From the IMG/VR virus record IMGVR_UViG_3300032214_000715, positions 124,001-188,000 of that record: a stretch of DNA of 64,000 bases; one strand, 5' to 3'. The notes beneath the pieces were generated by a model. It saw only the letters and a program-made list of their open reading frames with translations. It ran no database searches and was not told the origin of the DNA. Of this stretch, positions 1,674 through 47,326 are shown one piece after another; the stretch's first letter is position 1, and every line of letters starts with the position of its first letter. The translations under genes were made by a program, and so were the position numbers.

Positions 1674-1702
1674 AGTATAGCACTGTATTGATTTATTGTC
1701 AA
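1674..1702 (-). promoter_or_regulatory. Early sigma70-type promoter
   Basis: TTGACA-ATAAATCAATACAGTGC (17 nt)-TATACT, with TGn extended -10. Confidence 0.85.
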
Positions 1703-1733
1703 ATTTTTGGTTAATCAAAAATATCGTTTATTG

Positions 1734-1762
1734 GTGCTAACACAGACTCTATTTATTGTCAA
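1734..1762 (-). promoter_or_regulatory. Second, tandem early promoter with a weaker -10
   Basis: TTGACAATAAAT repeated exactly 60 bp upstream of the first copy; 17-nt spacer then TAGCAC. Confidence 0.5.
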
Positions 1763-11260: not shown

Positions 11261-12547
11261 TTACTCTTTGAAGTAAGCCCAAGTGCCAAACGGGGGCTTA
11301 ATAGTATCGTTACCGTGAATGATCCAAGTAACATCGGTGAAATTCTCATCGCCCCATGAACCGAACGGATATCCGTCAGTAAACACGATCAGCCGCTTGG
11401 TGTCCTTGTCGCGAGTCTTTAGATGATCAAAGATAGCGTCAAAGTCAGTGCCGCCACCCCCAGTTGGCTCGTATGAATCAATGGAATCCAGATTGTCACT
11501 GTTGAAGTCTTGAGCGTTGTAAACCGCAGTATCAAAGCAAAATACATGTACACGATAGCTATCAAAAGACTCCATGATTCCACGAACCTCACCAAGAAAT
11601 TGTGCTGCCTGCTTATTGCTAATTGACCCACTCATGTCAATAGCGACGGCAATATCAATTTCTTCACCAGGAGTCATTCCAGGCATAATAGCGTCCATAT
11701 GCCAACCACGACGACTCGGGCGAATAAAAGAATAATCGCTGCGAATAGCACTGGTCAGATTAGTTTGAATCAGTTCTCGCCAAGGCATTTTTGGCTCAGT
11801 AATTTCCTGAATCATTCGCTGAACTCCAGCTGGAACGTTTCCTGCCCCGTCACAAGAACGAGCGGCAGCAATAATGTTTTGCTTGATTTCCTGACGCAAT
11901 TGCTCACGCTCAGACTCAGACATAGGAGTGGGACGCTTTCCGCGCTTGCCGTCCTTGTCACCATTGCCATCACCTTCACCGTCTTCGTCTCCGTCAATGT
12001 GATCGTCAAGCATTTGATCAATTAGATCGTCAATATTGATCTTCTTGGCGTTCTTCATCAAATCGTCATAAATTTCTTCGGCTGGCTTGCCGTCATACTT
12101 TGCTTCATACAAGCAAGGAACAGTCTTGATAAATTCGCCAACCTTATGACGCTTCAAGTCTGCGTTAACAGCATAGTCATCGGCAATGTTCCAAATTTGA
12201 GGATCACGAGATTCGCGACGGCCCATGTGATCGTAGCAAACGTGAAGTACTTCGTGACCGAACAAGAATTCTACTTCGCCGCGAGTCAGCATCATAATGA
12301 AGCGACTATTGTAGTAAAAATTACGACCGTCGGTGGCAGCAGTGGACAGCCACTCATCAGCGTTAACCAACTTCAATCGTGTAGCCAGATTGCCAAAGAA
12401 TGAATTCTTAAACAACAGTGACACTCGCGCGCCAATAAGACGCTCACGTGCCTGATTGTCAATACTAGACTCTGTTGGGCCAATGAGCTTATCCAGCTTA
12501 GTGTTGCGAGACTTCTTGCTCTTCGTGGGATTCAGTACTTCTGACAT
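11261..12547 (-). CDS. vWA-domain metallopeptidase (DUF2201-like)
   Basis: TAATDG, HEVLH, NIAxDxxVN in the N-terminal part; MIDAS DMSGS, GGGGTDF and FTDG in the C-terminal part. Confidence 0.88.
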   Translation of the reverse strand: MSEVLNPTKSKKSRNTKLDKLIGPTESSIDNQARERLIGARVSLLFKNSFFGNLATRLKLVNADEWLSTAATDGRNFYYNSRFIMMLTRGEVEFLFGHEVLHVCYDHMGRRESRDPQIWNIADDYAVNADLKRHKVGEFIKTVPCLYEAKYDGKPAEEIYDDLMKNAKKINIDDLIDQMLDDHIDGDEDGEGDGNGDKDGKRGKRPTPMSESEREQLRQEIKQNIIAAARSCDGAGNVPAGVQRMIQEITEPKMPWRELIQTNLTSAIRSDYSFIRPSRRGWHMDAIMPGMTPGEEIDIAVAIDMSGSISNKQAAQFLGEVRGIMESFDSYRVHVFCFDTAVYNAQDFNSDNLDSIDSYEPTGGGGTDFDAIFDHLKTRDKDTKRLIVFTDGYPFGSWGDENFTDVTWIIHGNDTIKPPFGTWAYFKE

Positions 12548-12569: not shown

Positions 12570-12598
12570 ATTCTAGCAGTATATGTATTTTCTGTCAA
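12570..12598 (-). promoter_or_regulatory. Early sigma70-type promoter
   Basis: TTGACA-N17-TAGAAT with TGn. Confidence 0.8.
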
Positions 12599-12601
12599 AT
12601 A

Positions 12602-12629
12602 AAAAATGGCGTCCGTAGACGCCATTTTT
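12602..12629. terminator. Intrinsic terminator with a cUACGg tetraloop (minus strand)
   Basis: AAAAATGGCGTC-CGTA-GACGCCATTTTT. Confidence 0.88.
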
Positions 12630-12640
12630 AATGGCTTTTA

Positions 12641-13744
12641 TCAGCTACGAGCAGCATCAAGAATGTACCTGCCGTACTTCTTGTGAAACTCATCAAAGCA
12701 GGCCAGCTTTGACGGCTCCAGAGGAACACCGTATTGCTTGATGGCGATACGAGAACCAAGAATAACCAACTCAGTCTCAAAATTGTTCATCATGAACATG
12801 ATAAAGTTGTTAGTCATCTCGGCCAACTTTTCACGCTTGAGTTCCTTCTTGTCCATCAATGCCTTGAGTTCGTAGCAAAGAGAAACAGTCAGAGAGTACA
12901 TAGCCGATACTTCCTTGACCTTGAGTTCCTTGACCTTACCAGTCAGAACGTCAATCGCCTCGGGCAGTTGAGAACTGAACTTGCGGTGAGCTTGAAACTT
13001 AGCAGCAAGACCCTCGCCGACAGCACCAGCCACCAGAGTGAACAGTGTTTCACCGTCCATGTCCTCGTCCTTCAGCAGTTCGCTAACGAATGTCCAAGAC
13101 CGCGGAGTAGCGAAAGCACGACTGGCAGACTTTGAATCAAAATCATACATATCTTGCTTGGCGAAACTCAGATAGCCAACCACATCACTGTGAATACCCT
13201 TGGCAGTGGCCCACTGCTGCCAGCTAGGGAAGTCAGGGCGCATTTCCACGTGAATGAAACGATTGGCAAGCGGCATAGGCATGCGGAAAGTCACACCCTT
13301 GTCAGTCTCGCGATTACCCGCAGCCACAATCACCACGTTCTTAGGCAACACATACTTGCCAACACGACGATTCAGAATCAGTTGATAACCAGCAGCCTGA
13401 ACAGCAGGAGCGGCAGAATTCATCTCGTCCAGAAACAGAACCACGATGGGATACTGGCTGGCAAATTCTTCGTCAGGAAGATCCACTGGAGGTGCCCAGT
13501 CCATCTTGCCGATTTCCTTGTTGAAGAATGGGATGCCACGAATATCAGTGGGCTCCATCTGCGCCATACGCAGGTCAATCATGAACCCACCCAGTTCCTG
13601 AGTAATTTCACTGACGACATCGGACTTGCCAATTCCAGGAGGGCCCCACAAAAACACGGGACGTTGAACTTGAAACGCCTTCAGCAGAGCCTTGCGGGCC
13701 TGAATAGAGGTTACGGTATAAGAATCAGAGACTTGAACTGCCAT
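12641..13744 (-). CDS. MoxR-like AAA+ ATPase
   Basis: Walker A GPPGIGKS, Walker B LFLDE, AAGN, LANRF; probable start MAVQVS (ATG 13744) with GGAG RBS and promoter. Confidence 0.88.
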   Translation of the reverse strand: MAVQVSDSYTVTSIQARKALLKAFQVQRPVFLWGPPGIGKSDVVSEITQELGGFMIDLRMAQMEPTDIRGIPFFNKEIGKMDWAPPVDLPDEEFASQYPIVVLFLDEMNSAAPAVQAAGYQLILNRRVGKYVLPKNVVIVAAGNRETDKGVTFRMPMPLANRFIHVEMRPDFPSWQQWATAKGIHSDVVGYLSFAKQDMYDFDSKSASRAFATPRSWTFVSELLKDEDMDGETLFTLVAGAVGEGLAAKFQAHRKFSSQLPEAIDVLTGKVKELKVKEVSAMYSLTVSLCYELKALMDKKELKREKLAEMTNNFIMFMMNNFETELVILGSRIAIKQYGVPLEPSKLACFDEFHKKYGRYILDAARS

Positions 13745-13772
13745 TTTTGGCTCCTTTTTTGATGATGAAAGA

Positions 13773-13801
13773 ATTATAAAAGAAAGACGATTTATTGTCA
13801 A
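13773..13801 (-). promoter_or_regulatory. Early promoter, perfect sigma70 consensus
   Basis: TTGACA-N17-TATAAT. Confidence 0.9.
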
Positions 13802-13806
13802 ACAAA

Positions 13807-14151
13807 TTAAACTGCGCCGGTCCAAGTGACGCGAGAGAAATCCCCAGTCAGAACATTTCCACGAGAAAAATTCTTGGCGGGGGCGGCCCAAGATGCGGCC
13901 TTCAAAATGTCGCCCACTTTGAACTTGGCATCAGCCTTGGCAACAATGAACGAATGTACTCCGCCATTGCTGACAATCTTGAGATACTTGCTACCACGCT
14001 CGGTGCTCAGATTGGCGTTGAATCGCTCAACCATTTCCTTGCGAACTTGAGCCTTGATGGGATCGGACATATCAGTCTTGCCCCACGCGAGATAATCAGC
14101 ACGAATGTGATTCAGATATTCAGCGATCTTTGCGTCAAATTCAGCGGTCAT
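13807..14151 (-). CDS. Small early phage protein (GDILKAASWxAPA.N.RGN motif)
   Basis: GGAG RBS, own promoter, C-ending codon usage. Confidence 0.8.
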   Translation of the reverse strand: MTAEFDAKIAEYLNHIRADYLAWGKTDMSDPIKAQVRKEMVERFNANLSTERGSKYLKIVSNGGVHSFIVAKADAKFKVGDILKAASWAAPAKNFSRGNVLTGDFSRVTWTGAV

Positions 14152-14165
14152 TTTTTGCTCCGTTG

Positions 14166-14211
14166 TCTAACTCAGTGAATACAGTATATCAAGAAACCGA
14201 TTTATTGTCAA
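14166..14211 (-). repeat. Promoter/leader repeat, copy 1 (TTGACA-N17-TATACT)
   Basis: 26 bp (14166-14191) identical to 14424-14449, plus shared GATTTATTGTCAA. Confidence 0.9.
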
Positions 14212-14405
14212 ATTTTGCGTTCAGTCATAGCGACATATTCATCGTAAGACAGATACATATCGGTGAGAGGATTCCAGTACTGACCAGCACGCGGGTCATA
14301 GTACAGTGCAATATTGCCATCGTAGAAAAACGGACCTTCCAAGCCATCACGCTCAGTGAATGAGGCACGAAATTCAGGGTCAATGTTCAGAACACGATAT
14401 CCCAT
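14208..14405 (-). CDS. Small early hypothetical protein
   Basis: AGGAG RBS, own promoter; LEGPF...LYYDPRAGQYW; its TGA stop lies inside the next TTGACA. Confidence 0.75.
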   Translation of the reverse strand: MGYRVLNIDPEFRASFTERDGLEGPFFYDGNIALYYDPRAGQYWNPLTDMYLSYDEYVAMTERKI

Positions 14406-14423
14406 TACCGACTCCTGTTGCTT

Positions 14424-14469
14424 TCTAACTCAGTGAATACAGTATATCAGGGAATGGATTTATTGTCAA
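14424..14469 (-). repeat. Promoter/leader repeat, copy 2 (TTGACA-N17-TATACT)
   Basis: Direct repeat of 14166-14211. Confidence 0.9.
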
Positions 14470-14717
14470 GAAATGAGAGAGCCATAGATTATCCATTTTT
14501 CAAGATGATCAATAGCTTCGTTGACTGTTTTTAATTCATTTAAATTTTGAGAATCTTTCCCACGAGAGCGATTTTTGACTTCGGCACCACTTAAAATAGT
14601 CACCATTCCGTCGATATTTGACAACATTTTATGTAAGTCGCGGTTGTAGGGCAAACTACGAATTTTTGATTGTAGCTCGTCTCTTCGAGTTGACCATTCT
14701 AAGCTTGAATTAATCAT
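14466..14717 (-). CDS. Small early hypothetical protein, probably leaderless
   Basis: 83-aa ORF; -10 box ends 7 nt before the ATG; its TGA stop lies inside the next TTGACA. Confidence 0.7.
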   Translation of the reverse strand: MINSSLEWSTRRDELQSKIRSLPYNRDLHKMLSNIDGMVTILSGAEVKNRSRGKDSQNLNELKTVNEAIDHLEKWIIYGSLIS

Positions 14718-14723
14718 ATGCGT

Positions 14724-14752
14724 AGTGTAAATGCTACACTATTTATTGTCAA
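14724..14752 (-). promoter_or_regulatory. Early promoter with an internal inverted repeat
   Basis: TTGACA-N17-TACACT; TAGTGTA-N5-TACACTA inverted repeat at 14723-14741. Confidence 0.75.
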
Positions 14753-16483
14753 TCAATAGTTCTGTCCTGCTACGAATCCTGACCAACTTGTCCCGCCATC
14801 ATATGTCATTATGGTAATGATATCGTATTTGTTAGCAGTTGCGGTTATTACTGGGGCCACTCCACTTGGCCATTTGATAGACGATGGCCACGCTAGTGAT
14901 CTTTCGCCAATAGCATCTTGTCTAATAATTAGTGCCAAGTAGAAAAGTCTACCACTGACTGGTACATTACTGAAAGTTAGACTGGTAATGTTTGAACTCA
15001 TTGTAATGACAAAATTATTTGACAGTGAACAATCAATATTGGTTGTTGCTGACGCTGTTACATTACTAGTAGACTCAGTATAAGCAGTTCCAAATGCTAA
15101 TGACGATGACAGGGTTACAGCGCTTGAAAATATTGTAGCGTTCGGTACTGTGCCGCCGGCAAAACCACCGCCTGCTACAACATCATCAACATATTTTTTT
15201 GTTGCTGCGTCTGTTTCTTGTGTAGGTGTAGCAAGACTTGTAATACGCTTACTAGAAACATCAACTGTTCCGGTTCCAATTGGCACTAAATTAACATTAG
15301 CATTAGATCCACCAGCAGTAAATGTTAGAGCTTCTGTTCCAGTAATACTACCGGTAGTAGTTCCAGTTCCACCATTTGCTACTACAAGAGTGCCCTCTAG
15401 TGTTATAGTTCCACTACTAGTTATTGGACTGTCTTTTACTGTTAATCCTGTAGTACCACCACTTAGTGCTACACTAGTAACGGTTCCAGTGGCAGCCGAT
15501 ATAGTTGTCCAAGTTGGTGCTCCACCGTTTCCGTTGCTGGTTAATACTTGACCCGTTGTGCCATAATTAGCGCCACTTAGACCCCACGCACCAGAGCTAA
15601 CTATACGCAGTCTCTCTGTTTGTGAACTGCCAGTCGTTACGATTACTGAACCAACTCCATCTGGTCCAACACCGCTCTGTAAATATACATTGCCACCAGT
15701 TCCGCTACCACCTGCTGCCCCCGGTCCCCCTCGTAGATATACATGACCTGGAAGACCTCCAATAATTGGAACTCCGCACGCTCCACCAATAATTAGTATA
15801 CTAGCTCCAGTAGCGGAGCCAGTCGCGGCGGCCGCAGCAGCAATAGTAAAAGTACTATCGGATGCTCCGACGCTAATAGTATTACTGCCATTATAGCTAA
15901 TTTGTGAGGTGGCAGAATACGCATTAGAACTCTTAAATATTAATTGTCCGTTACTTCCAGGAACTGCGGTTAATCCAGTACCACCATTAGCTATAGCTAA
16001 TGTCCCACCCAGAGTCAATGTTCCGGATGATGTTATTGGTCCTCCAGTAAGAGTTAATCCAGTAGTGCCTCCGCTACTGCTAATACTTGTTACTGTTCCA
16101 ACTGCTCCCGGAGCCCACGTTAATCCACTAGTGGAAGCTGAATCTGCCATCAACACTTGTCCATCAATGCCAACAGCTAATCTTATGTTGCTGGTACCAT
16201 TGTTGGCAATAATGTCTCCTTTAGTTGTGGCGGGAGATAACTCATTGAACGCAGCGGTTTTATTATTTTGACTGGTTCCCCCTTGAGCTACTGATAGTGG
16301 AGTTGTTAATCCGCTCAAGCTAGTAATGTCGCTATTAGCTCCGCTTTTCGCCGCTTCTAAATTACTACGAGAAATGCCAATGTCACTGTTCCCAGTGCCA
16401 CCTTGAGCAGTGGAAAGTATTCCTGTTATTTGTGCTGCTTGTATAGATTGTATTTGTGTTGACTGTATTTTATTTTGTGGCAT
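14753..16483 (-). CDS. Fibre protein (GGTG shaft repeats; C-terminal domain ending GFVAGQNY)
   Basis: Gly/Ser/Thr-rich, xxGGTG repeats, DAATKKYVD; C-terminal domain paralogous to that of 43363..46047. Confidence 0.8.
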   Translation of the reverse strand: MPQNKIQSTQIQSIQAAQITGILSTAQGGTGNSDIGISRSNLEAAKSGANSDITSLSGLTTPLSVAQGGTSQNNKTAAFNELSPATTKGDIIANNGTSNIRLAVGIDGQVLMADSASTSGLTWAPGAVGTVTSISSSGGTTGLTLTGGPITSSGTLTLGGTLAIANGGTGLTAVPGSNGQLIFKSSNAYSATSQISYNGSNTISVGASDSTFTIAAAAAATGSATGASILIIGGACGVPIIGGLPGHVYLRGGPGAAGGSGTGGNVYLQSGVGPDGVGSVIVTTGSSQTERLRIVSSGAWGLSGANYGTTGQVLTSNGNGGAPTWTTISAATGTVTSVALSGGTTGLTVKDSPITSSGTITLEGTLVVANGGTGTTTGSITGTEALTFTAGGSNANVNLVPIGTGTVDVSSKRITSLATPTQETDAATKKYVDDVVAGGGFAGGTVPNATIFSSAVTLSSSLAFGTAYTESTSNVTASATTNIDCSLSNNFVITMSSNITSLTFSNVPVSGRLFYLALIIRQDAIGERSLAWPSSIKWPSGVAPVITATANKYDIITIMTYDGGTSWSGFVAGQNY

Positions 16484-16491
16484 GTTCTTCC

Positions 16492-19400
16492 TTATACAAA
16501 GCTATATATTGTAATTTCGTCACTCGCTTGTAGTTCTTGATTAAAGGTTATTTCTTTTGTTCCAGTAACCATATAGGACTTAGTAGCTCCCTCTCGTTGT
16601 AATACACCATTTATGAAAACTTGAATATACACAGTGTCGTCGGTTTTTGCTACTGTTTTTACCGTAGTTGTTATCACTATTTGTCCAGCAGTAGCAGTTA
16701 TTTCTTGATATTTAGGCCCTGCTGATTTCCACTGTGGTGCTGCTCCTGTACCACTTGAAGTTAATACTTGACCAGCAGTACCTGATTGACCCTGAATATC
16801 CCACTGTCCACTGGAGTGTATTTTTAATTGACTATCAAAACCAGGAATATTGTCGTTAGTAAACGTTACTTCCTCGTCTTTTTGATAGTTTACTGTTTGC
16901 AAGTCTATTGATTTGCTTTTTATTACTAGATCAGTAGCATTATTACTTTCTATTGAATTTTCAATATCATCAAAAACTTTTTGATAACGAATACTTGAAA
17001 TGATAGTAGCTTCTTTAGTGGGCTGAATTTGTACGGAATACTCGTTATTCATTAGAATTTCGTTACCGTTATCATCGGGCTCTAGTCTGGTGTGTATTAC
17101 TTCTAAAGACGCTCTTGGATTTGAGTTATTACCAATCCAACCCTGATTTCCGGCTATTCTAAGTCCACCGTGAGGAAGAAAGTTATATTGATTTAAAAAT
17201 CGCAGTTCTTCTACATTTAATCTTTCAAGTTTACCAACCTGTTGAAGAGAACTGTGAGTTATCGTGCTTGGCAATGTAGATCCTACAAGCCCTCCAAGAT
17301 TTACACTTGGGAATTTCCAAAGAGCCGGCGTGTCAGCGCCACCGCTAGTAAGAACCATTCCTTCGGTCCCATATTCGCCGTTTATTCCTATTTTTCCGGA
17401 ATTATCTATTTCAACTATTTCTATTAGAGGGCTTGCTGGATCCTTTGCTGTTCTAAATATAATATTTCCGCCAGATCCAAGAGCTGAAGTGCCACCGTCA
17501 ATATAAACATTCCCACCAGTAGATTCTTCTCCCGACGCAGAACCTGCTTTTAAGAATATATCTGCTCCAAATCTATTTGAAAGATTACTCGCGCCTGATT
17601 GTAGTACTAAACTTACTGGCCCCGGTACATTGACTGATGTTTGCGTGATGGAAGTTCCATCAACGTTTGATGCTCCAAAAATAGTAAAGAAGTTGTTGTC
17701 GTCTTCATCACTCCAGGCACTACCTAATCTTAGAGCAGACTGAGCTACGTAGTTAATATCAGTGATTCCATCTATTACCCCATCTTTATTAAATAATAGA
17801 TTTTTATTTACACCCCGTGATATAACGGTAGTTGGATATATCCATTCTGCTGTTGAGCCGTCACTGACTAGGGATTTACCAGCAGTGCTACTGTCTTGAG
17901 TTGGTAGAAGTTTCTTAATTCCCGCTTCTGCCGTCGTCGCTCCTGTGCCACCGTGTTCTATTTTTAGAGTTCCCCCAAGCGTAAACGTTCCTCTATCAGT
18001 TATTGGTCCACCGAGCGTTGTAAGTCCTGTTGTCCCTCCACTCATCTCAACTGAGTTTACTGTTCCAACTACTCCGCCGGTAATTACACTAATAACCCCG
18101 TTATCGTCAGTTCTAGTAGTTATTCCGTCTGGCTTTACAAGTCCCAATCTACCTTCAGTAGCAGTTGGAACTAAACTATCACCTGATAGACTGGCCCAAA
18201 AAGCATTTGTTCCGTTACTTGCTAAAACATAGTTTTCTGCTAGCTCTTGATCTGGTAATAGATTAGTTAAAGCATCTACTTTGTTGGTTGCCGCTGTACC
18301 ACCGTACTCTATAGATAGAGTACCCCAATATGGAGTTGTATCCCCTCCGGCAGATAATAGAGGCTGTCCTGGCAATCCTATTTTTGGATCGCCTCCACCC
18401 TCTGAGTCCTGACCCATTTCTCCCAACTGCCACGCGCCAGTATTCCAGATGGTAAAGACTCTCTTAGCGTCTTCATATTTAGCGGTTTTAAATATTATCT
18501 GTCCGCCCTCTTGTTTATATGGGTTATTATTAGGGTCAAGTTCAGAACTTATATATCCCTCCCCGGCCTCAATATAAATATCTGCGCCTGGGCTCGATGG
18601 AGAAAAACCACCAGGAGATGGGGCGCCTGCGACCCCATCTCCCGCTTTTATAAATATGCTTCCAATCCCGATATCTTCAGGCTCCCACGTAGGTCTTTCA
18701 CGCCCACTGGCGTGACCTCCAACAATTGATATTGTTCCGGTGTGGTATCCATATCCCGGTCGTGAGCCTGAGTTAGATGTGTATATTCTAAGATTAGTCC
18801 ATGACTCGCTCGTAATTCCGAACTCATGCGTTACAGAATCGGTATTTCTAAAACGATCACCGAGTACTAAAGCACTATTGGGCACATATATGCGCGGGTC
18901 CAGTGATGGTTCATAACCGTTGTGTATATATTTAACTGTTCTAGCGTACTGTGTTTTTCGTGCGCCCCCGTCGGCATATATAAAAGAATTATAATCCTCT
19001 TGCTCTAGAGTATCAAGACTCAATGCTCTGGCACTAATTTGATCAGTGGCCGGGTCAATATACATAGAGTTAGAGTTCAAAGCAACTATACCCGGCTGAA
19101 TATAGTTAGCTATCGGTACAGGAGCACTTTCCCAAAAAAGATCGTATCCATTCCACAGCTCAGGTGTCGTCTCTTCATATGGTACATATCGATACTGTAG
19201 ATAATATGAATTACCGTCATTCGGGTGAGGTGGGAGCAAATTCCTTATATCAGTGCTTAATGTGCCATCATGTGCTACTTGTATTGTTGTTCCATCTGGT
19301 TTTACTACCCCAAGTCTATTAGTAGTGGCTATTTCTAACCCAGATGCCTGCACTGGCGCCCAACCAAGTTGTATTTTGCCGGAGTTATAATTGTATGTTA

Positions 19401-22400
19401 GATATTCACCGTGGCCTGACGTGGTGTTGCCCACCGGAAAAATTCCACCAATATCTACTTTTATTATTCCTTCTGTTTCAGTAATAATGGTTTCGCCGTC
19501 TAATCTAACTCCACCCAATTTACCTTCGGATCCAACTCCCGCTCTTGGAATGAATGCTTCCATCTCTGCCCAAAAAAGACTACCACCAGTGGTGCTTAAG
19601 ACTTTACCTTGATTTCCTTCTTGATTTGGAAAAAATTCATTGTAAAATAAATCACCGAAAAATTCATTGTTAAAGCCTAATTGCCCGTGAATATCCAGTA
19701 GTAGATGCTCTTGATTTATTTTAATGACACCAGGTCGTGAGGCCGCTCCGTATGTAGCTAGTGGAAGTTCTTCCCATCTAAGTGTTCCGGATTTTGTACC
19801 TTCTTCGGTAGAAACGCCGAATCCGTCAGTAGTTAAAAAGTGAAAATTTTTTCCTGATTGATCGGGAATTATTTGATTTCCAACATTTATAGTGTTTACC
19901 TTAATCATTCCACGACCCTCAGGGTCACGAAGAGTGTCATGATCAATCTCTGCTACTTTTGCCCTTAATGAAATACCCAATCCTGCCGGATGCCCGACCA
20001 GTTGTAGACCTCCGTATTGAACATCTCCTACCGGTGGGTGAATCAAAACCATTCCGCGTTTGCTATAACTAGCTATCATAGAATCCCACTTTGGAGATTG
20101 ACTTGTTCCTCTAGATATTAGTATATGATTTTGTTCACCAGTGTCAGTTTCTATCTTGTTAAAAGCCCAAGACCCCGACGAGTTTATTCTAAAAACTTCT
20201 TCCGACGGTTCCCCAGTACTAAAACTTATAAAGCCAGAATCTGCTAGTCCAAATCCACGACCTCCAGTTAAGTACAGATTCCCTGCCGGGGGAATAGTTA
20301 AACCCTCAATAGCGAATGAATCGCCGCCTTTTATTTCTACTGATGATCCTCCGTTAGTAATAGATTTTGCTTCTTGTCCTACTATTAAAAATAATTCGGA
20401 TAAGCCACTTCCGACTGTTAATTCTCCTCGACCGTCATATGATATGCGACTGGTACCACCTAAAAATCCTTCGTTATTGTACTGAAGCTGTCCGTTTAAT
20501 CCAACGGCGCCGGGCTTTGCTGTATCCCATCGTATGTTAGTGCCGTTTGTAGTAAGAACGAAATCTTTTTTGCCAGCTTGAGGAGGTAGAAATGAGTTTA
20601 TGGCAGCAGATGGGTCCGATGTTCCAGTTCCACCCTGTTCTATGCTTAATGGAGTTGTTAAACCACTAAGACTTGTGATATCACTATTTGCTCCGCTCTT
20701 TGCCGCCACCAAATTTATTCTGGCACTATCTGCTGTTGTCCCACCGGTGCCCCCAGCAAGAACAGGCAACACATCAGCCATTAATGTAAGCGCACTAGTA
20801 CTAAACAGTGCTCTATTTGGACCAATCAGAGTTGATAATCCAGTGCCGCCTTGATTTACACTAAGCGGTGTCGTCAGTCCACTCAAGCTAGTGATGTCGC
20901 TGTTATCACCACTTTTTGCTACTTCTAAATTAGCGCGAGCGCCCTCTGGTGTTTTACTACCAGTACCACCCTGATTTACACTAAGCGGAGTTGTTAGACC
21001 ACTTAAGCTAGTGATGTCACTGTTATCTCCGCTTTTTGCTGCGCCTAAGTTTGCCCTTGCGCCTGTCGGCGTTTTACTACCAGTGCCGCCTTGATCAACG
21101 CTAAGCGGTGTCGTCAGTCCACTCAAGCTAGTGATGTCACTGTTATCTCCGCTTTTTGCTGCTCCTAAGTTTGTTCTTGCGACAGAGGGCGTAGAAGCGT
21201 TGGTTCCTCCCTGCGCGATAGTAAGAGGAGTAGTCAGTGCTGATAATCTTGTAATATCATTGTTTACTCCACTCTTAGCCACTTCTAATTCTATTCTAGC
21301 TAGTGCTGGAGTTGACGCATTAGTTCCGCCCTGCGCCACACTAAGTGGAGTTGTTAATCCACTTAAGCTAGTAATGTCACTGTTATCACCACTTTTTGCT
21401 GCTTTCAAGGACTCTCTGGCTTCAGCCGCGTTTGTTGATCCAGTGCCGCCATTATTAACAGATAATACTCCGCCAAGAGTTATGATCCCGATTCCACCAT
21501 TTGCTCCCGTTACTGGTCCGCCAGTGGTAGTTAACCCAGTTGTGCCACCGTTAACATTTACGCTTTTTACAGAGGTCGCTAGTGGCTCTACCCAAGATAA
21601 TATTCCCCCGCCATCGGTAGTAAGAACTTTATTTTCGTTGCCAGTTTGATCGGGCAACATAGCAGTAATAGTTGAACTTAGATTATCGTAACCAGTGCCG
21701 CCAAATTGCGGTGATAGCACTTGAGTCAATCCAGAACTTTTTCCAGAAATGTCACCCGTTATACTTGCTCCACTTATAGCTGCTATAGTTGATAGTGCGT
21801 TCCCGTCGGATACAACAAATCCAGAGTCAAAACTGGTTCTTCCAGTTCCGCCCTTTGATATCGGCACAGTATTTAAACTAAGAGTAATAGTTCCTGATCT
21901 TGTTATTGGGTTAGTGCCTCCTACAGTTAAATCAGTAGAGGTTATGGTGACTGAATTTACTGAACCATACTGTGGAATATTAAGAACGTTATTATCAAAC
22001 GTAGCAGCACCACTGGTGCCAACAGTCTGTAGCGTGACTACACCCTGATACACGGGAATATTTAATACATTGTTCGTGAATGTAGCTGATCCTGTTACAT
22101 CATTCGTGGTTAAACTTACAGGCAGTTGATAATCAATATTGGGTTCCGCAGTTTGTAGACCGCCATTAACTCCCTTAGTTATTCCATTGATGTATGTGCC
22201 AATTGTTATGCTAGGGTAAGTACTTGCGGAAGACACTTCTCCAGTAAATCCATTGGATGAGTTAACCGAAACTGATTTAACTGTGCCTACTATACCGTCG
22301 GTAGTAACACTTATTCGTCCGGTTTGATTGACTACTATAGTACTATTGTCAACAGTGACTGAACCCAGTACCGACATAGTTGCTACTCTAGAGCTTACTG

Positions 22401-23211
22401 TTACTGCTCCAGTAGATGATGATAAACTAATGCCGGGACCAGCACTTAGCGACATTACCCAATTATTTTTAGTACTCAGTATTCCACTATCGTCTATATT
22501 TAACCCGTCTCCAATGATGACTCCACCCAAGCGACTGGTTGTTGAAGTTGGAAGTGTATAGGATATTACACCATCAACGCTTATTGCTATAGTAGTACCA
22601 TCAACTTTAACTCCACCCAGTGTATTTGATCCAGCTATTGGTAACACATAAGGTATAGCAGATAGTTTCCCTTCAGAATCAATAACAAGTCCTGCGCCTG
22701 TTTTGACTCCTCCCAACTCATTATTGTTTGCTATTGGCAATGTATATTGCTGAGCACTAATTATGCCGTCTTCAGTTATTGTTATTGTGCTGTTATCAAT
22801 CTTTACTCCACCAACGCTGCCACCACTAGCAATTGGTAGAGAATATGATCCAGCGCTTAGCACTCCATCACTGTCTATTGTTAGATTGTCTCCGATCTTG
22901 ACTCCACCTAGTGTATTGGCAGAGGCTGGACGAAGTATATAAGCGTCTCCAGTAGTGCTTGAAATTTCTCCAGTTATCGGATCTACTACTATAGTAGTGC
23001 CATCAACTTTAACTCCGCCCAACGTGCTAGCACTTGCTACAGGCAACTGATAGGGAGTGCCAGTGCCGACAAATATGCCGCCGACTGTTTTTCCATCGCC
23101 GACTCTAATAGAGTTAGTTATCGGGTCGTACCATAAGCGACCCTCTTGCCCTATTTTTTCTTCTGCCGACTGTGAATTTCTACTGGTAAAAAAATCCTGA
23201 GTGTAAGACAC
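16492..23211 (-). CDS. Very long mosaic fibre protein (2239 aa)
   Basis: GTG start, late promoter at 23235-23241; N-terminal GRLWY...IRVGDG, LPxAxxxxLGGVK repeats, 40-aa repeats, C-terminal VFINGVLQ domain. Confidence 0.8.
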   Translation of the reverse strand: MSYTQDFFTSRNSQSAEEKIGQEGRLWYDPITNSIRVGDGKTVGGIFVGTGTPYQLPVASASTLGGVKVDGTTIVVDPITGEISSTTGDAYILRPASANTLGGVKIGDNLTIDSDGVLSAGSYSLPIASGGSVGGVKIDNSTITITEDGIISAQQYTLPIANNNELGGVKTGAGLVIDSEGKLSAIPYVLPIAGSNTLGGVKVDGTTIAISVDGVISYTLPTSTTSRLGGVIIGDGLNIDDSGILSTKNNWVMSLSAGPGISLSSSTGAVTVSSRVATMSVLGSVTVDNSTIVVNQTGRISVTTDGIVGTVKSVSVNSSNGFTGEVSSASTYPSITIGTYINGITKGVNGGLQTAEPNIDYQLPVSLTTNDVTGSATFTNNVLNIPVYQGVVTLQTVGTSGAATFDNNVLNIPQYGSVNSVTITSTDLTVGGTNPITRSGTITLSLNTVPISKGGTGRTSFDSGFVVSDGNALSTIAAISGASITGDISGKSSGLTQVLSPQFGGTGYDNLSSTITAMLPDQTGNENKVLTTDGGGILSWVEPLATSVKSVNVNGGTTGLTTTGGPVTGANGGIGIITLGGVLSVNNGGTGSTNAAEARESLKAAKSGDNSDITSLSGLTTPLSVAQGGTNASTPALARIELEVAKSGVNNDITRLSALTTPLTIAQGGTNASTPSVARTNLGAAKSGDNSDITSLSGLTTPLSVDQGGTGSKTPTGARANLGAAKSGDNSDITSLSGLTTPLSVNQGGTGSKTPEGARANLEVAKSGDNSDITSLSGLTTPLSVNQGGTGLSTLIGPNRALFSTSALTLMADVLPVLAGGTGGTTADSARINLVAAKSGANSDITSLSGLTTPLSIEQGGTGTSDPSAAINSFLPPQAGKKDFVLTTNGTNIRWDTAKPGAVGLNGQLQYNNEGFLGGTSRISYDGRGELTVGSGLSELFLIVGQEAKSITNGGSSVEIKGGDSFAIEGLTIPPAGNLYLTGGRGFGLADSGFISFSTGEPSEEVFRINSSGSWAFNKIETDTGEQNHILISRGTSQSPKWDSMIASYSKRGMVLIHPPVGDVQYGGLQLVGHPAGLGISLRAKVAEIDHDTLRDPEGRGMIKVNTINVGNQIIPDQSGKNFHFLTTDGFGVSTEEGTKSGTLRWEELPLATYGAASRPGVIKINQEHLLLDIHGQLGFNNEFFGDLFYNEFFPNQEGNQGKVLSTTGGSLFWAEMEAFIPRAGVGSEGKLGGVRLDGETIITETEGIIKVDIGGIFPVGNTTSGHGEYLTYNYNSGKIQLGWAPVQASGLEIATTNRLGVVKPDGTTIQVAHDGTLSTDIRNLLPPHPNDGNSYYLQYRYVPYEETTPELWNGYDLFWESAPVPIANYIQPGIVALNSNSMYIDPATDQISARALSLDTLEQEDYNSFIYADGGARKTQYARTVKYIHNGYEPSLDPRIYVPNSALVLGDRFRNTDSVTHEFGITSESWTNLRIYTSNSGSRPGYGYHTGTISIVGGHASGRERPTWEPEDIGIGSIFIKAGDGVAGAPSPGGFSPSSPGADIYIEAGEGYISSELDPNNNPYKQEGGQIIFKTAKYEDAKRVFTIWNTGAWQLGEMGQDSEGGGDPKIGLPGQPLLSAGGDTTPYWGTLSIEYGGTAATNKVDALTNLLPDQELAENYVLASNGTNAFWASLSGDSLVPTATEGRLGLVKPDGITTRTDDNGVISVITGGVVGTVNSVEMSGGTTGLTTLGGPITDRGTFTLGGTLKIEHGGTGATTAEAGIKKLLPTQDSSTAGKSLVSDGSTAEWIYPTTVISRGVNKNLLFNKDGVIDGITDINYVAQSALRLGSAWSDEDDNNFFTIFGASNVDGTSITQTSVNVPGPVSLVLQSGASNLSNRFGADIFLKAGSASGEESTGGNVYIDGGTSALGSGGNIIFRTAKDPASPLIEIVEIDNSGKIGINGEYGTEGMVLTSGGADTPALWKFPSVNLGGLVGSTLPSTITHSSLQQVGKLERLNVEELRFLNQYNFLPHGGLRIAGNQGWIGNNSNPRASLEVIHTRLEPDDNGNEILMNNEYSVQIQPTKEATIISSIRYQKVFDDIENSIESNNATDLVIKSKSIDLQTVNYQKDEEVTFTNDNIPGFDSQLKIHSSGQWDIQGQSGTAGQVLTSSGTGAAPQWKSAGPKYQEITATAGQIVITTTVKTVAKTDDTVYIQVFINGVLQREGATKSYMVTGTKEITFNQELQASDEITIYSFV
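20840..21450 (-). repeat. Five tandem 120-bp (40-aa) in-frame repeats, AKSGDNSDITSLSGLTTPLSVxQGGT
   Basis: Sequence lines at 20881, 21001, 21121, 21241 and 21361 align with a 120-bp period; a sixth copy at about 20625-20710. Confidence 0.9.
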
Positions 23212-43308: not shown

Positions 43309-43362
43309 AATAATTCCTATCCTTTGTAATATTTATCAGGGCTTATTCAGCCCCGATATGTA

Positions 43363-46047
43363 TTAATAATTTTGCCCAGCGACAAATCCGTACCAGGTAG
43401 TTCCGCCATCGTGAGTTACTAAGTTAAGAATATCAGTTTTACTGCCTGTAGTTGTTAATGTAGGAGCAGTTCCACTAGGCCATTTAACTGCTGCTGGCCA
43501 AGTAATTGTTCTACTACCAGTAGCATCCTGATTTAAGAATAATGTCATGTTATACGCACGACCAGCTACTGGTACATTACTGAATGCTAGAGTAGTAATA
43601 CTAGCATTCATAGTAACGTTAAATATGTTGCCTGCTGAGCAATCTATTGTTGTACTTGACGCTGATGTTACATTGGTACGAGTTTCAGTGTAGTTAGTTC
43701 CGAATGTCGTTGAACCACTAACTGTTAGACTACTTAATGTACCTACGCTTGTTAGTGAACTACTGACAACATTACTTGCTAGAGTTGTTCCAGTTAGTGT
43801 TCCGGCGTCACTAGAACCACCGCCAGAGACTGCTGCCCAAGTAGGAACTCCACCAACAACTGTTAGCACTTGATTGGTAGTACCAATAGCTAATTTGCTT
43901 AGTGTATTTGAGTCACTAGCATATAGTAAGTCACCAGTAGTCCAAGTAGATTGTGCGGTACCACCGTTAGTAGCAGCAAGAGTTCCGGATAGAGTAATTG
44001 TACCGCTACTTGTTATTGGGCCATCACTAGTAGTTAAACCAGTTGTTCCGCCACTGACAGCGACGGATGTAACTCTGGACATTGTTTGCCAGGTAGGAGC
44101 AGCATTTCCGTTACTTGTCAATACTTGTCCGCTAGTACCAACGTCAGAACCAGTTGATCCTACGCTCCAAGCTCCACTGGAGGTAATTCTTAATCTTTCT
44201 ACTAGTGAGGTAGAGTTAGAATATGTCTGTATAGCAACATATCCAGGGAAACTGCCGGCGCTGCCGCCGTTTAGAATAACATTACCGCCTGTTGTAACAC
44301 CGCCGCCACTTGATGTGCCACCCTGTAACGTTACATCTCCGGCAGTTGAGTTTGTTAGACTTTGTGTTCCGCCCACAATAACAATATTTCCGGGGAAAGG
44401 AGTAGGAGTGGATACAGATGAATTTCCAGTAATTGTGGTGGTAGCTGCCGCATAGGTAGCTCCAACGGCTCCAATACTTATACTAGTTACTCCGCTTAGT
44501 AAGCTGTTTATTGCGACACTAGCGGTTGTACCTCCAGTACCACCAGCAGCGATGGGTAGAGTTCCAGCAGTAATAGCACTAGCACTGGTTGAATATAATG
44601 CTCTGTTAGCTGCTCCAAAAGTAGATAATCCTGTGCCACCAACTGATGTTGGAACGGCACTGATGATATCAGTTCCAGCGACTTCGCCCTGCATGTTAAA
44701 AGTCGTTACTGAAGCTCCGATTCCAGAGTTAGTTCCAGGAATATAGTAATTTCCGCCACGAACATATACCGCTCCAGCAGATCCATTTACTGCCTTTCCA
44801 GTTCCAGCGACTACATTATAGGTAACGGCAGTAGCTATTACTGTGGCGCCGGCGGCGATATTAATACCGTTTCCATTGGCTTTAGTGGTAGTGACGGCAC
44901 TGTAACCTAAGCTAACGGTTCCGGTGGCAACATTTATTACATTGGTGGCACTAGTGGTTGCTATTTGAACTAAACTTAGTGTAATAGTACCAGATAGATT
45001 CACTGCGTTAGTTGTGCTACCTGAGCTTAGTGTCATATAACTAATAATACAGTTAGTTGTATTAGTGACATTTAACGTCACTGCTGTTCCAACTGTTGTA
45101 ATATCTGTGTTATACAAACGAATTCTGTTTCCACCGCTAGCGGTGCTAGTAGTTGTAAATCCAGCGCCGGAATCGCTGTACAGATAGCAATTATTCACAT
45201 CTAAACTACATTGTACTGTTCCAGCTAGAGTTAGTGCAGATGAAGCTCCTCCTGTAATAAACAGATTATTTAAACTGATATTAGTCTGAAAAATGCCCTG
45301 ATATGACTGTGTAGGTTCAACCGTTACAGAGCCATTTAAGAATGTACTTTTTAATTTGCCCTCAGCGCCAAACAAATGCGTGGTTGCTCGGTTTATAGTA
45401 ATGTTTTCTGCGTAGTTTCCTGGACCTATGAATATAGCTATGTGCGTGGCACTGCTGACAGTTACTGGGTATTGAGTATTTGCGTAACTTAGTGCTGCCC
45501 CGATGGTCAAGAATGGTTTCGAAATAGAGCCATCAGCGTTGCTATCATTACCGCCCTTAGTTACATACAAGCGATTAGCGATGTCTACTGTACTCCAGCT
45601 AGCACTGGTTCCATTGGTAACTAACACTTTACCATTATTATTAGCTTGACTTGGTAAAGAATCTAGAGTAGCCCAACTAGTATCTGTGCCGTCAGTAGTT
45701 AAAAATTTTCCAGTATTTCCGGTTTGACTTGGAGCAAGTGCGTTGAACGCAGAGTTTGCGGTGGTCTGTCCGGTTCCGCCGTTTGTAACCGCTAGTGTGC
45801 CAGCAAGTGTAATTGTACCGCTATCAGTGACTGGCCCACCCGTCGCTGATAATCCCGTTGTACCTCCACTAATATCTACACTAGTTACAGTGCCAGAATT
45901 TTGTCCTCCTATTACTATTCCACCGGCAGTGCTGCCGTCTCCAACATATAGTCGTTGAGTGTCTGTAGTAAATATTAATTCTCCCGCTGCTGGAGTTATA
46001 TTTGTTCTATTTGCTGCTAAGCCTCTTCTTAATTGTAATGATGGCAT
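43363..46047 (-). CDS. Fibre/spike protein: Mtd_N-like N-terminus, beta-helix-like middle, C-terminus ending GFVAGQNY
   Basis: LQLRRG...PAAGEL...LYVGDG; YVTKGGNDSNADGSISKPFLTIGAA...IFIGPGNYAE resembles a beta-helix cap. Confidence 0.8.
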   Translation of the reverse strand: MPSLQLRRGLAANRTNITPAAGELIFTTDTQRLYVGDGSTAGGIVIGGQNSGTVTSVDISGGTTGLSATGGPVTDSGTITLAGTLAVTNGGTGQTTANSAFNALAPSQTGNTGKFLTTDGTDTSWATLDSLPSQANNNGKVLVTNGTSASWSTVDIANRLYVTKGGNDSNADGSISKPFLTIGAALSYANTQYPVTVSSATHIAIFIGPGNYAENITINRATTHLFGAEGKLKSTFLNGSVTVEPTQSYQGIFQTNISLNNLFITGGASSALTLAGTVQCSLDVNNCYLYSDSGAGFTTTSTASGGNRIRLYNTDITTVGTAVTLNVTNTTNCIISYMTLSSGSTTNAVNLSGTITLSLVQIATTSATNVINVATGTVSLGYSAVTTTKANGNGINIAAGATVIATAVTYNVVAGTGKAVNGSAGAVYVRGGNYYIPGTNSGIGASVTTFNMQGEVAGTDIISAVPTSVGGTGLSTFGAANRALYSTSASAITAGTLPIAAGGTGGTTASVAINSLLSGVTSISIGAVGATYAAATTTITGNSSVSTPTPFPGNIVIVGGTQSLTNSTAGDVTLQGGTSSGGGVTTGGNVILNGGSAGSFPGYVAIQTYSNSTSLVERLRITSSGAWSVGSTGSDVGTSGQVLTSNGNAAPTWQTMSRVTSVAVSGGTTGLTTSDGPITSSGTITLSGTLAATNGGTAQSTWTTGDLLYASDSNTLSKLAIGTTNQVLTVVGGVPTWAAVSGGGSSDAGTLTGTTLASNVVSSSLTSVGTLSSLTVSGSTTFGTNYTETRTNVTSASSTTIDCSAGNIFNVTMNASITTLAFSNVPVAGRAYNMTLFLNQDATGSRTITWPAAVKWPSGTAPTLTTTGSKTDILNLVTHDGGTTWYGFVAGQNY

Positions 46048-47293: not shown

Positions 47294-47326
47294 ATATTTT
47301 CCTTGTCCATACTAGTATTTATGTTA

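What the first reader, a model, noticed from the sequence alone, without database searches (positions are those of the whole stretch)
13773..14755. Array of single-gene cassettes delimited by a repeated early promoter, with stop codons built into the next -35 box
Seen in sequence: four TTGACAATAAAT-containing promoters within 1 kb (13773-13801, 14183-14211, 14441-14469, 14724-14752), each driving exactly one gene. Each upstream gene ends 0-5 nt from the next TTGACA, and in two cases (14208, 14466) the TGA stop is the TGA of TTGACA. Two copies share 26 identical bp over the -10 and leader. Established: repeated early-promoter elements (PeSLs) in T4-like phages were proposed to shuffle small genes by recombination. 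Inference: an accessory cassette array in which recombination at the conserved promoter adds or removes genes and supplies their stop codon.
Basis: partly seen in the sequence, partly recalled or inferred. Interest (0 to 1): 0.62.

Follow-up and report, generated by a model that had tools for sequence, protein, structure and literature searches.

The report
Promoter-bounded gene cassettes in a jumbo phage
A large uncultured phage carries small genes that each sit behind a copy of the same strong promoter, and comparison with related phages shows these genes being gained, lost, reordered and moved, with the breakpoints inside the promoter copies, much as already described for T4-type phages.

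Summary
Four copies of TTGACAATAAAT-type sigma-70 promoters lie on the minus strand at exactly the stated coordinates. Upstream genes end 0-5 nt before the -35 box, or inside it at 14208 and 14466. Two copies share a 46-nt repeat.

The motif is genome-wide: 25 exact and about 38 PWM copies, all on the coding strand, in six clusters.

Relatives support the interpretation:
- Across 69 related loci, the slot between a conserved 83-aa gene and a MoxR-like ATPase holds 0-5 small genes of many families.
- The relative L003 has two extra single-gene cassettes. One indel junction lies inside a 30-bp stretch that is identical in the two flanking promoters.
- That same 77-aa cassette sits about 70 kb away in the window's own genome. 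Homology starts at one promoter and ends in the next.
- p65 and p114 are about 95% identical between phages whose core genes are 57-80% identical.

Corrections:
- Only p65 and p114 are accessory. p83 and the ATPase are core genes.
- No terminator separates the units, so "one promoter, one gene" is not shown.
- The repeats have no stem-loop, so they are PeSL-like, not PeSLs.
- The phage is a distant PA5oct relative, not shown to be T4-like.

No read or RNA test was possible.

The parts
14753..16483 (-). 576-aa tail-fibre-like gene; upstream border of the slot. Its TGA stop abuts the first -35 box.
   Evidence: ORF. PHROG tail fibre families match its C-terminus. Family F22 in L001-L003.
14724..14752 (-). 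Promoter of p83 (TTGACA-17-TACACT). The ATG begins 6 nt after the -10 box and there is no Shine-Dalgarno sequence, so the mRNA would be leaderless.
   Evidence: The same -10 plus 6 nt plus ATG geometry occurs in 24 of 33 distinct p83-family contexts.
14466..14717 (-). p83: conserved 83-aa three-helix protein of unknown function. It is a core anchor of the slot, and its stop is the TGA of the next TTGACA.
   Evidence: Present in 50 of 69 related loci. AlphaFold pLDDT 86.5 with three helices. No informative match.
14406..14469 (-). Promoter-leader repeat heading p65: -35 box, TG-extended -10 TATACT, conserved leader, GGAG ribosome-binding site. The repeat core is 14424-14469.
   Evidence: Identity to L003 jumps from about 60% to 97% at 14431-14419.
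14208..14405 (-). p65: accessory cassette gene, a viral OCRE-like small protein. Its stop is the TGA of the next TTGACA.
   Evidence: Pfam OCRE just below cut-off. Atlas clusters are viral and OCRE-like. In this slot in only 5 of 80 loci. 60-78% aa homologues occur in about 40 other viral contigs with no ATPase nearby, most behind their own sigma-70 promoter.
14152..14211 (-). Promoter-leader repeat heading p114. The repeat core is 14166-14211. The inferred crossover interval is 14159-14188.
   Evidence: The window copy equals L003's left promoter through the spacer and L003's right promoter from the leader onward.
13807..14151 (-). p114: accessory cassette gene (DUF7717). It has its own TAA stop 5 nt before the next -35 box.
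   Evidence: Pfam PF24835 at 29.1 bits, cut-off 27. In this slot in 4 of 80 loci. 94.5% nt identity to L003 against 79.7% for the ATPase. Orthologues in L002 and L169 end in the TGA of TTGACA instead.
13745..13801 (-). Promoter (TTGACA-17-TATAAT, 12 of 12) and leader of the core ATPase; downstream border of the slot.
   Evidence: Homology blocks in L011/L027 start exactly at this promoter.
12641..13744 (-). MoxR-like AAA+ ATPase, a core gene.
   Evidence: Pfam AAA, AAA_5, bpMoxR. phrog_1297. 49% aa identity to the PA5oct ATPase.
12602..12629 (-). GC-rich hairpin followed by a T-run. This is the likely terminator where transcripts from the array end.
12570..12598 (-). Promoter (TTGACA-17-TAGAAT, TG-extended) directly after the hairpin, heading the DUF2201/VWA gene. 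This hairpin-plus-promoter pair is the only composite here with PeSL-type architecture.
1691..1762 (-). Two further exact copies of the -35 motif, 60 nt apart, upstream of a 393-aa gene.

Best explanation
The region is a hyperplastic slot in a jumbo phage whose full genome is probably about 350 kb. The slot lies between the tail-fibre genes plus a conserved 83-aa gene on one side and a conserved MoxR-ATPase/VWA unit on the other.

Small accessory genes, here p65 and p114, sit in the slot as single-gene cassettes. Each is headed by a copy of a 46-60 bp promoter-leader repeat. The repeat contains the -35 motif TTGACAATAAAT, a 17-nt spacer, a TG-extended -10 TATACT, a conserved leader and a GGAG ribosome-binding site.

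The repeat most likely has two roles.
1. It is a host-sigma-70 promoter and translation-start unit. This is inferred from sequence.
2. It is a portable patch of homology. Homologous recombination at these patches, probably by the phage's own RecA/UvsX-like enzyme, deletes, inserts, reorders and exchanges cassettes. This happens within a genome, between promoter arrays, and between co-infecting relatives. The breakpoint pattern is shown; the mechanism is inferred.

Genes are packed so tightly that the upstream reading frame often ends in the TGA of the next TTGACA. A cassette joined to any promoter copy in that frame is therefore terminated.

Because no terminator separates the units, transcripts probably run through the array and end at the hairpin at 12602-12629.
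For: Promoter family.
- 25 exact and about 38 PWM copies, all on the coding strand, mostly 25-35 nt upstream of a start codon with a ribosome-binding site.

Variable content.
- The slot holds 0-5 genes from many families in 69 related loci. p83 and the ATPase are kept.

Exact junction.
- L003 carries an extra 77-aa cassette. The window's promoter at 14211 equals L003's left promoter through the spacer and L003's right promoter from the leader onward. The switch lies inside 30 bases that are identical in both L003 copies.

Same cassette elsewhere.
- That cassette is 90.7% identical to the window's own genome at 68258-67906. Homology starts at TTGACA and ends in the next promoter's -10 box and leader. 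The flanks are unrelated.

Mosaic identity to L003.
- p83 57%, p65 96.5%, p114 94.5%, ATPase 79.7%, with a sharp step at the p65 leader.
- In L169 the reverse holds: ATPase 84% aa, but p65 46% and p114 58%.

Permutation.
- L011 and L027 carry the blocks [F23 F27] and [F32 F4] in opposite order. Every block edge is at a promoter.

Second array.
- The counterpart of genome 218-224 kb in L166 has swapped, missing and new cassettes. Two of its cassettes lie in other arrays of the window's genome, one of them at 97% aa identity.

Statistics.
- 95 of 550 homology-block ends fall in promoter elements, against 25 +/- 4.5 at random.
- 75 of 139 intergenic ends fall in promoter elements, which make up 25% of intergenic bases.

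Stop codons.
- 12 of 25 upstream ORFs end in the TGA of TTGACA. Of the 13 ORFs that overlap a promoter, 12 do so in that frame (p = 1.7e-5 against 1/3).

Other support.
- The genome encodes a RecA-family protein over the Pfam cut-off.
- The nearest cultured relative, PA5oct, uses host RNA polymerase with TTGAC/TATAATA promoters at mapped transcript starts (PMC7318152).
Against: - Promoter activity, timing and ongoing recombination are therefore inferred.
- In this array nearly all intergenic DNA is promoter. Breakpoints that leave genes intact would land in promoters whatever the mechanism.
- Only one indel shows a clean hybrid-promoter signature. The 54-aa indel does not: the window's spacer matches neither L003 copy.
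- The relatives are metagenome assemblies, and most arrangements rest on one contig.
- The loci are related to each other, so the counts are not independent events.
- There are no paralogous cassettes within the genome, so no evidence of intragenomic duplication.
Confidence: 0.7

Rival explanations
1. The repeats are only regulatory. Each small gene needs a strong promoter and a standard leader. Cassettes turn over by illegitimate or other recombination, and selection simply removes events that break genes. Surviving breakpoints then lie in the only intergenic DNA available, which is the promoters.
For: Intergenic space in the array consists almost entirely of promoter-leader sequence. The 54-aa indel has no clean hybrid promoter. 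Many homology-block ends (455 of 550) lie inside genes, where similarity simply decays.
Against: The 77-aa indel junction lies inside 30 identical bases shared by the two flanking repeats, which is the signature of homologous exchange. Intergenic ends are enriched in promoter elements about two-fold over their share of intergenic bases. Moved cassettes carry the promoter parts on both sides.
Confidence: 0.18
2. The apparent shuffling is an assembly artefact. Metagenome assemblers mis-join contigs at the repeated promoters.
For: All relatives are metagenome contigs. The repeats occur many times per genome.
Against: Identical stretches are only 26-46 nt, shorter than usual reads and final k-mers. 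The same architectures recur in contigs from different samples, such as L042/L043/L045/L060 and L047-L049/L052-L054, and L002 and L167. Moved cassettes differ by about 9% from the window's copies, so they are not reads of this phage.
Confidence: 0.05
3. A dedicated site-specific system, integron-like or a PeSL-binding recombinase, recognises the repeat and moves the cassettes.
For: The first 12 bases are identical in 25 copies and the leader is conserved. The PeSL papers left site-specific recombination open (PMC4122927).
Against: There is no inverted repeat or attC-like structure. The conserved bases are those of a consensus promoter and a ribosome-binding site. Crossover points vary in position within the repeat. 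No integrase was looked for.
Confidence: 0.05

Closest known systems
PeSLs (promoter-early stem-loops) of T4-type phages phi1/RB49, PST/T4 and nt-1/KVP40 (Arbiol et al. 2010, PMC2839356; Comeau et al. 2014, PMC4122927)
   Same: Repeated sigma-70-consensus promoters clustered in hyperplastic regions next to small genes of unknown function. Indels, replacements and moves between relatives have their breakpoints in the repeats. A phage with its own recombination enzyme.
   Different: There is no stem-loop or terminator in the repeats. The repeat instead extends into a conserved leader and ribosome-binding site. Upstream stop codons often lie inside the -35 box rather than in an AT-rich tract before it. 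The host genome is a distant PA5oct relative and T4-type kinship was not shown. Mini-circles were not tested.
Promoters of Pseudomonas jumbo phage PA5oct (PMC7318152)
   Same: Nearest cultured relative by the ATPase, at 49% aa identity. It depends on host RNA polymerase and has TTGAC and TATAATA motifs at transcript starts.
   Different: In the passages read, that paper makes no claim of cassette shuffling or of a conserved promoter-leader repeat. The kinship is distant.
Morons of lambdoid phages (from established knowledge)
   Same: Single accessory genes that carry their own promoter and are inserted between core genes.
   Different: Morons usually carry their own terminator and are not flanked by a genome-wide repeat family. 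Here there is no terminator between units.
Integron gene cassettes (from established knowledge)
   Same: Arrays of single-gene units that are added, removed and reordered at a repeated junction.
   Different: Integron cassettes have no promoter of their own and carry folded attC sites cut by an integrase. Here every unit has its own promoter and no attC-like inverted repeat.

Membership tests
PeSL (promoter-early stem-loop) elements | Repeated motif matching the sigma-70 promoter consensus | tested here: met
   10-12 of 12 hexamer matches with a 17-nt spacer; two of the four are TG-extended. 25 exact and about 38 PWM copies, all on the coding strand.
PeSL (promoter-early stem-loop) elements | Adjacent stable stem-loop acting as terminator or attenuator | tested here: not met
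   Folding energies of the three cassette-type repeats equal those of shuffles (z = 0.0 to 0.6). No terminator-like site between the units. No inverted repeats. Only the p83 promoter has a weak 6-bp palindrome (z = -2.5), and it is not conserved in L002 or L003.
PeSL (promoter-early stem-loop) elements | AT-rich tract upstream of the -35 box holding the upstream stop codon | tested here: inconclusive
   Upstream stops lie 0-14 nt before the -35 box in most cases, but in 12 of 25 they lie inside it. The upstream bases are mostly coding sequence.
PeSL (promoter-early stem-loop) elements | Concentrated in hyperplastic regions beside small genes of unknown function | tested here: met
   Six clusters in the genome. 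Slot content varies among 69 loci. The genes have no known function.
PeSL (promoter-early stem-loop) elements | Indel, replacement and shuffling breakpoints between relatives lie in the motif | tested here: met
PeSL (promoter-early stem-loop) elements | Recombination between neighbouring copies yields mini-circles | not testable with these tools
PeSL (promoter-early stem-loop) elements | Host genome is a T4-type myovirus | tested here: inconclusive
   The gp23 family search found nothing, but its controls also found nothing. The record is about 68% complete. The ATPase is closest to PA5oct-like jumbo phages.
Integron cassette array | Cassettes without promoters, bounded by attC sites with imperfect inverted repeats | tested here: not met
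   Every unit has its own promoter. No inverted repeats or stable folds.
Moron | Own promoter plus own terminator around a single accessory gene | tested here: not met
   A promoter is present, but there is no terminator between units.

The most novel reading that the evidence does not exclude
The promoter-leader repeat is a selected, self-contained plug-and-play junction. Its first bases terminate whatever reading frame is joined upstream. Its remainder supplies the transcription and translation start for whatever is joined downstream. Homologous recombination alone, with no dedicated recombinase, could then run an integron-like cassette economy across a whole clade of about 350-kb phages.

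The frame bias of stop codons in the -35 box fits this (12 of 13 overlapping ORFs). The stricter version, stops kept in all three frames, was not significant: 19 of 28 elements against 14.5 +/- 2.6 in shuffles.
Probability: 0.15. Interest if true: 0.6.

Novelty: new variant of a known kind. Interest (0 to 1): 0.45.

Why it matters
The finding extends promoter-mediated modular shuffling beyond T4-type phages, where it was described, to a widespread clade of uncultured jumbo phages. It shows that the stem-loop is not needed: a promoter plus a shared leader is enough to mark the exchange points.

It gives a concrete, testable picture of how accessory genes circulate among large phages. Cassettes about 95-97% identical sit in genomes whose core genes are 57-80% identical.

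It also marks p65, p114 and their neighbours as mobile, probably early-expressed genes worth testing for host take-over or anti-defence roles. The repeat may serve as a handle for finding such genes in metagenomes.

Tried and rejected
- My first collection scan used the wrong spacer length (N9 instead of N8) and found nothing. That blank is meaningless. A corrected 23-base leader pattern found 12 stretches.
- Stem-loop or RNA element in the repeats: none found. Folds equal shuffles and there is no Rfam match.
- Stops in all three frames as a designed feature: 19 of 28 against 14.5 +/- 2.6 in shuffles, p about 0.06, not significant.
- Paralogous cassettes within the genome: none among 28 promoter-headed genes.
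- Comparison of the 64-71 kb array with close relatives: the only close hit (L148) is an identical piece of the same phage, and the others are about 50% aa identical, too distant for breakpoints.
- Function of p83: no result from Pfam, PHROGs, NCBIfam, a PDB profile search, Foldseek against PDB and BFVD, or the Atlas. Only uncharacterised phage proteins matched.
- T4 major capsid family search: uninformative, because the controls found nothing.
- AAA_24/Sak4 search: only sub-threshold hits.
- MITE-like mobile element: rejected. There are no inverted repeats.
Full report
**What is there**

The window is bases 124001-188000 of a 239,163-bp linear IMG/VR virus record. It has 39.8% G+C and an estimated completeness of 68%. 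Related contigs reach 348,724 and 349,716 bp, so the full genome is probably about 350 kb.

Most long ORFs are on the minus strand: 147, against 65 on the plus strand. The genes of this finding are also on the minus strand. In order of transcription they are:

| Unit | Coordinates | Notes |
|---|---|---|
| Tail-fibre protein, 2239 aa | 16492-23211 | |
| Tail-fibre-like protein, 576 aa | 14753-16483 | |
| p83 | 14466-14717 | |
| p65 | 14208-14405 | |
| p114 | 13807-14151 | |
| MoxR-like AAA+ ATPase | 12641-13744 | |
| Hairpin with T-run | 12602-12629 | likely terminator |
| DUF2201/VWA protein | 11261-12547 | has its own promoter |

The ATPase is 49% identical to that of Pseudomonas jumbo phage PA5oct, and more distant from Rak2/121Q-like phages. 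A search for the T4 capsid family was uninformative because its controls also found nothing.

**Check of the observation**

- The four promoters lie at 13801-13773, 14211-14183, 14469-14441 and 14752-14724. They match the two consensus hexamers at 12, 11, 11 and 10 of 12 positions, always with a 17-nt spacer. Two have a TG extension.
- The 12-base motif with up to one mismatch occurs 10 times in the window against 0.77 expected. No shuffle reached 10.
- The 576-aa gene stops directly before the first -35 box. p83 and p65 stop in the TGA of TTGACA. p114 stops 5 nt before the last -35 box.
- Positions 14166-14211 and 14424-14469 are a 46-nt direct repeat at 91% identity.

One thing the sequence does not show is that each promoter drives exactly one gene. 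No terminator-like site lies between the units.

**The repeat family**

- The genome holds 25 exact copies of the 12-base motif, all on the minus strand.
- A weight matrix finds about 38 sites, again all on the minus strand. They cluster at 43-48, 64-71, 82-87, 125.7, 137.8-138.8 (this finding) and 221-224 kb.
- The consensus runs from the -35 box through a TG-extended TATACT into a conserved leader with a GGAG ribosome-binding site. The start codon follows 25-35 nt after the -10 box.
- About 17 copies share this cassette-type leader. It comes in two forms that differ by three bases.
- The repeats do not fold better than shuffles (z = 0.0 to 0.6). They contain no inverted repeats and match no Rfam family.

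**Comparison with relatives: the decisive test**

The ATPase recovered 80 loci from IMG/VR and 80 from metagenomes.

*Slot content.* In 69 loci with enough upstream sequence, the p83 family is present in 50. The ATPase is present in all, by construction. The space between them holds from zero to five small genes drawn from many families. p65 is found there in 5 loci and p114 in 4. Gene content is therefore not fixed. p83 and the ATPase are core genes. p65 and p114 are accessory.

*Nearest informative relative.* L003 (ATPase 86% aa identical) has five units: p83, a 54-aa gene, p65, a 77-aa gene and p114. Each has its own promoter.

- For the 77-aa indel, the window's promoter at 14211 is identical to L003's left promoter through the spacer, and to L003's right promoter from the leader to the p114 start.
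- The switch lies inside 30 bases (window 14159-14188) that are identical in both L003 copies. This is what an exchange between two repeat copies would leave.
- The 54-aa indel is also bounded by promoters but shows no such clean hybrid.

*The same cassette elsewhere.* The 77-aa cassette exists in the window's own genome about 70 kb away, at 68258-67906, with 90.7% nucleotide and 97% protein identity. Homology begins at the TTGACA of its promoter and ends in the -10 box and leader of the next promoter. The flanks are unrelated.

*Mosaic identity.* Nucleotide identity between the window and L003 is:

| Segment | Identity to L003 |
|---|---|
| End of the tail-fibre gene | 57% |
| p83 | 57% |
| p65 | 96.5% |
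| p114 | 94.5% |
| ATPase | 79.7% |

A sharp step occurs at 14431-14419, inside the p65 leader. Other relatives show the opposite pattern:

- L169: ATPase 84% aa, but p65 46% and p114 58%.
- L002/L167: ATPase 91%, p114 57%, and a different small ORF in place of p65.

Cassette history is thus uncoupled from core history.

*Further cases.*

- L011 and L027 carry two two-gene blocks in opposite order. Every block edge is at a promoter.
- L166 comes from the same sample as L003 and corresponds to the window genome's 218-224 kb array. Compared with that array, two genes are swapped, two are missing and two are new. Two more are genes that in the window's genome sit in the 47-kb and 68-kb arrays. 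One of these is 97% identical in protein. Its shared block runs from the -10 box of its own promoter to the leader of the next.
- p65 homologues at 60-78% identity occur in about 40 other viral contigs with no ATPase nearby, most behind their own sigma-70-type promoter.

*Statistics.* Across 51 non-redundant loci, 95 of 550 homology-block ends fall within promoter elements, against 25 +/- 4.5 for random positions (maximum 41 in 1000 trials). Of 139 ends in intergenic DNA, 75 fall in promoter elements, which make up 25% of intergenic bases. These counts are not independent events, because the loci are related.

**Stop codons in the -35 box**

- Of 25 promoters in the genome with an upstream ORF of at least 50 aa ending nearby, 12 ORFs end in the TGA of TTGACA. 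One ends in the TGA of the extended -10 box. Twelve end 0-34 nt upstream.
- Of the 13 ORFs that overlap a promoter, 12 are in the one frame that stops at once (p = 1.7e-5 against one third). In relatives the figure is 26 of 36.
- Orthologues switch state. p114 has its own TAA in the window and in L003, but uses the promoter's TGA in L002 and L169.

The pattern is real and recurrent. It fits extreme packing, with the -35 box as a ready stop. That recombination "supplies" the stop is a reasonable inference, not a demonstrated fact. A stricter idea, that the repeat keeps stops in all three frames, is not significant: 19 of 28 elements against 14.5 +/- 2.6 in shuffles.

**How it most likely works**

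*Shown:*
- a genome-wide, strand-specific family of consensus promoter-leader repeats;
- variable cassette content in the slot;
- breakpoints, moves and identity steps located in the repeats;
- a RecA-family gene in the genome.

*Inferred:*
- The repeats are active host-sigma-70 promoters, probably early. This is by analogy with PA5oct, which depends on host RNA polymerase and has TTGAC/TATAATA motifs at transcript starts (PMC7318152).
- Exchange is by homologous recombination between repeat copies.
- Transcripts read through the array and end at the hairpin at 12602-12629.

*Main rival:* the repeats are only regulatory, and breakpoints lie in them because nothing else is intergenic. The hybrid junction and the two-fold enrichment within intergenic DNA argue against this but do not exclude it. 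Assembly artefact and a dedicated recombinase are less likely, for the reasons given with each rival explanation.

**Comparison with what is known**

The closest described system is the PeSL of T4-type phages (PMC2839356, PMC4122927). PeSLs are repeated sigma-70 promoters with an adjacent stem-loop terminator. They cluster in hyperplastic regions, indels break within them, and they form mini-circles.

Here the promoter, the location and the breakpoint features are met. The stem-loop feature was tested and not met. Circles could not be tested. T4-type kinship was not shown. The element therefore works like a PeSL but should not be filed as one. It is a promoter-leader variant in another phage lineage. 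The only composite in this stretch with true PeSL-type architecture is the hairpin plus promoter at 12570-12629.

Morons and integron cassettes are looser analogies; the differences are listed in the membership test.

**Limits**

- There are no RNA data.
- All relatives are metagenome contigs.
- The functions of p83, p65 (viral OCRE-like) and p114 (DUF7717) remain unknown.

**Verdict**

It is a new variant of a known kind, of moderate interest.

Noticed in passing
window 14718-14752 (minus strand); also L002:1539-1576, L003:8488-8525, L042 and L047 upstream of the p83 family gene: The p83-family gene starts 6 nt after the -10 box of its promoter, with no ribosome-binding site. This holds in 24 of 33 distinct contexts across the clade, which suggests a conserved leaderless mRNA. 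In more distant relatives a terminator-like hairpin with a T-run precedes this promoter.
   Followed up: partly
window 12570-12629: A GC-rich hairpin with a T-run is followed within 4 nt by a TG-extended promoter for the DUF2201/VWA gene. This terminator-plus-promoter composite has the PeSL-type layout, unlike the cassette repeats.
   Followed up: partly
genome 82-87.5 kb (outside the window; L247:1-7501): Seven tRNA genes are interspersed with copies of the same promoter. One of them was called without an amino-acid assignment. Several promoters (genome 83793, 83930, 84126, 85101) are followed by no ORF, only by sequences with short hairpin-like leaders. These may be non-coding RNAs.
   Followed up: partly
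window 1691-1762: Two exact copies of the -35 motif lie 60 nt apart upstream of a 393-aa gene. The upstream copy has a poor -10 box (TAGCAC), so it may be a decayed or remnant promoter.
   Followed up: no
window 16492-23211 and 14753-16483; also about 43362-43706 and 46395-48049: The 2239-aa tail-fibre protein contains many copies of a motif of about 27 aa. Parts of both fibre genes have 66-76% nucleotide matches to other places in the window, so there are several fibre paralogues. The fibre genes are among the most divergent between relatives.
   Followed up: no
genome 225351-226106 (outside the window; L144): A RecA/UvsX-family gene with a 358-aa open frame lies next to the 221-224 kb promoter array.
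   Followed up: no
extended -10 box of the promoter copies, genome-wide: Where the -10 box is preceded by TGn, n is A in 21 of 28 copies. This gives a TGA in the frame that the -35 box leaves open. The copies are related by descent, so this may be inheritance rather than selection.
   Followed up: partly
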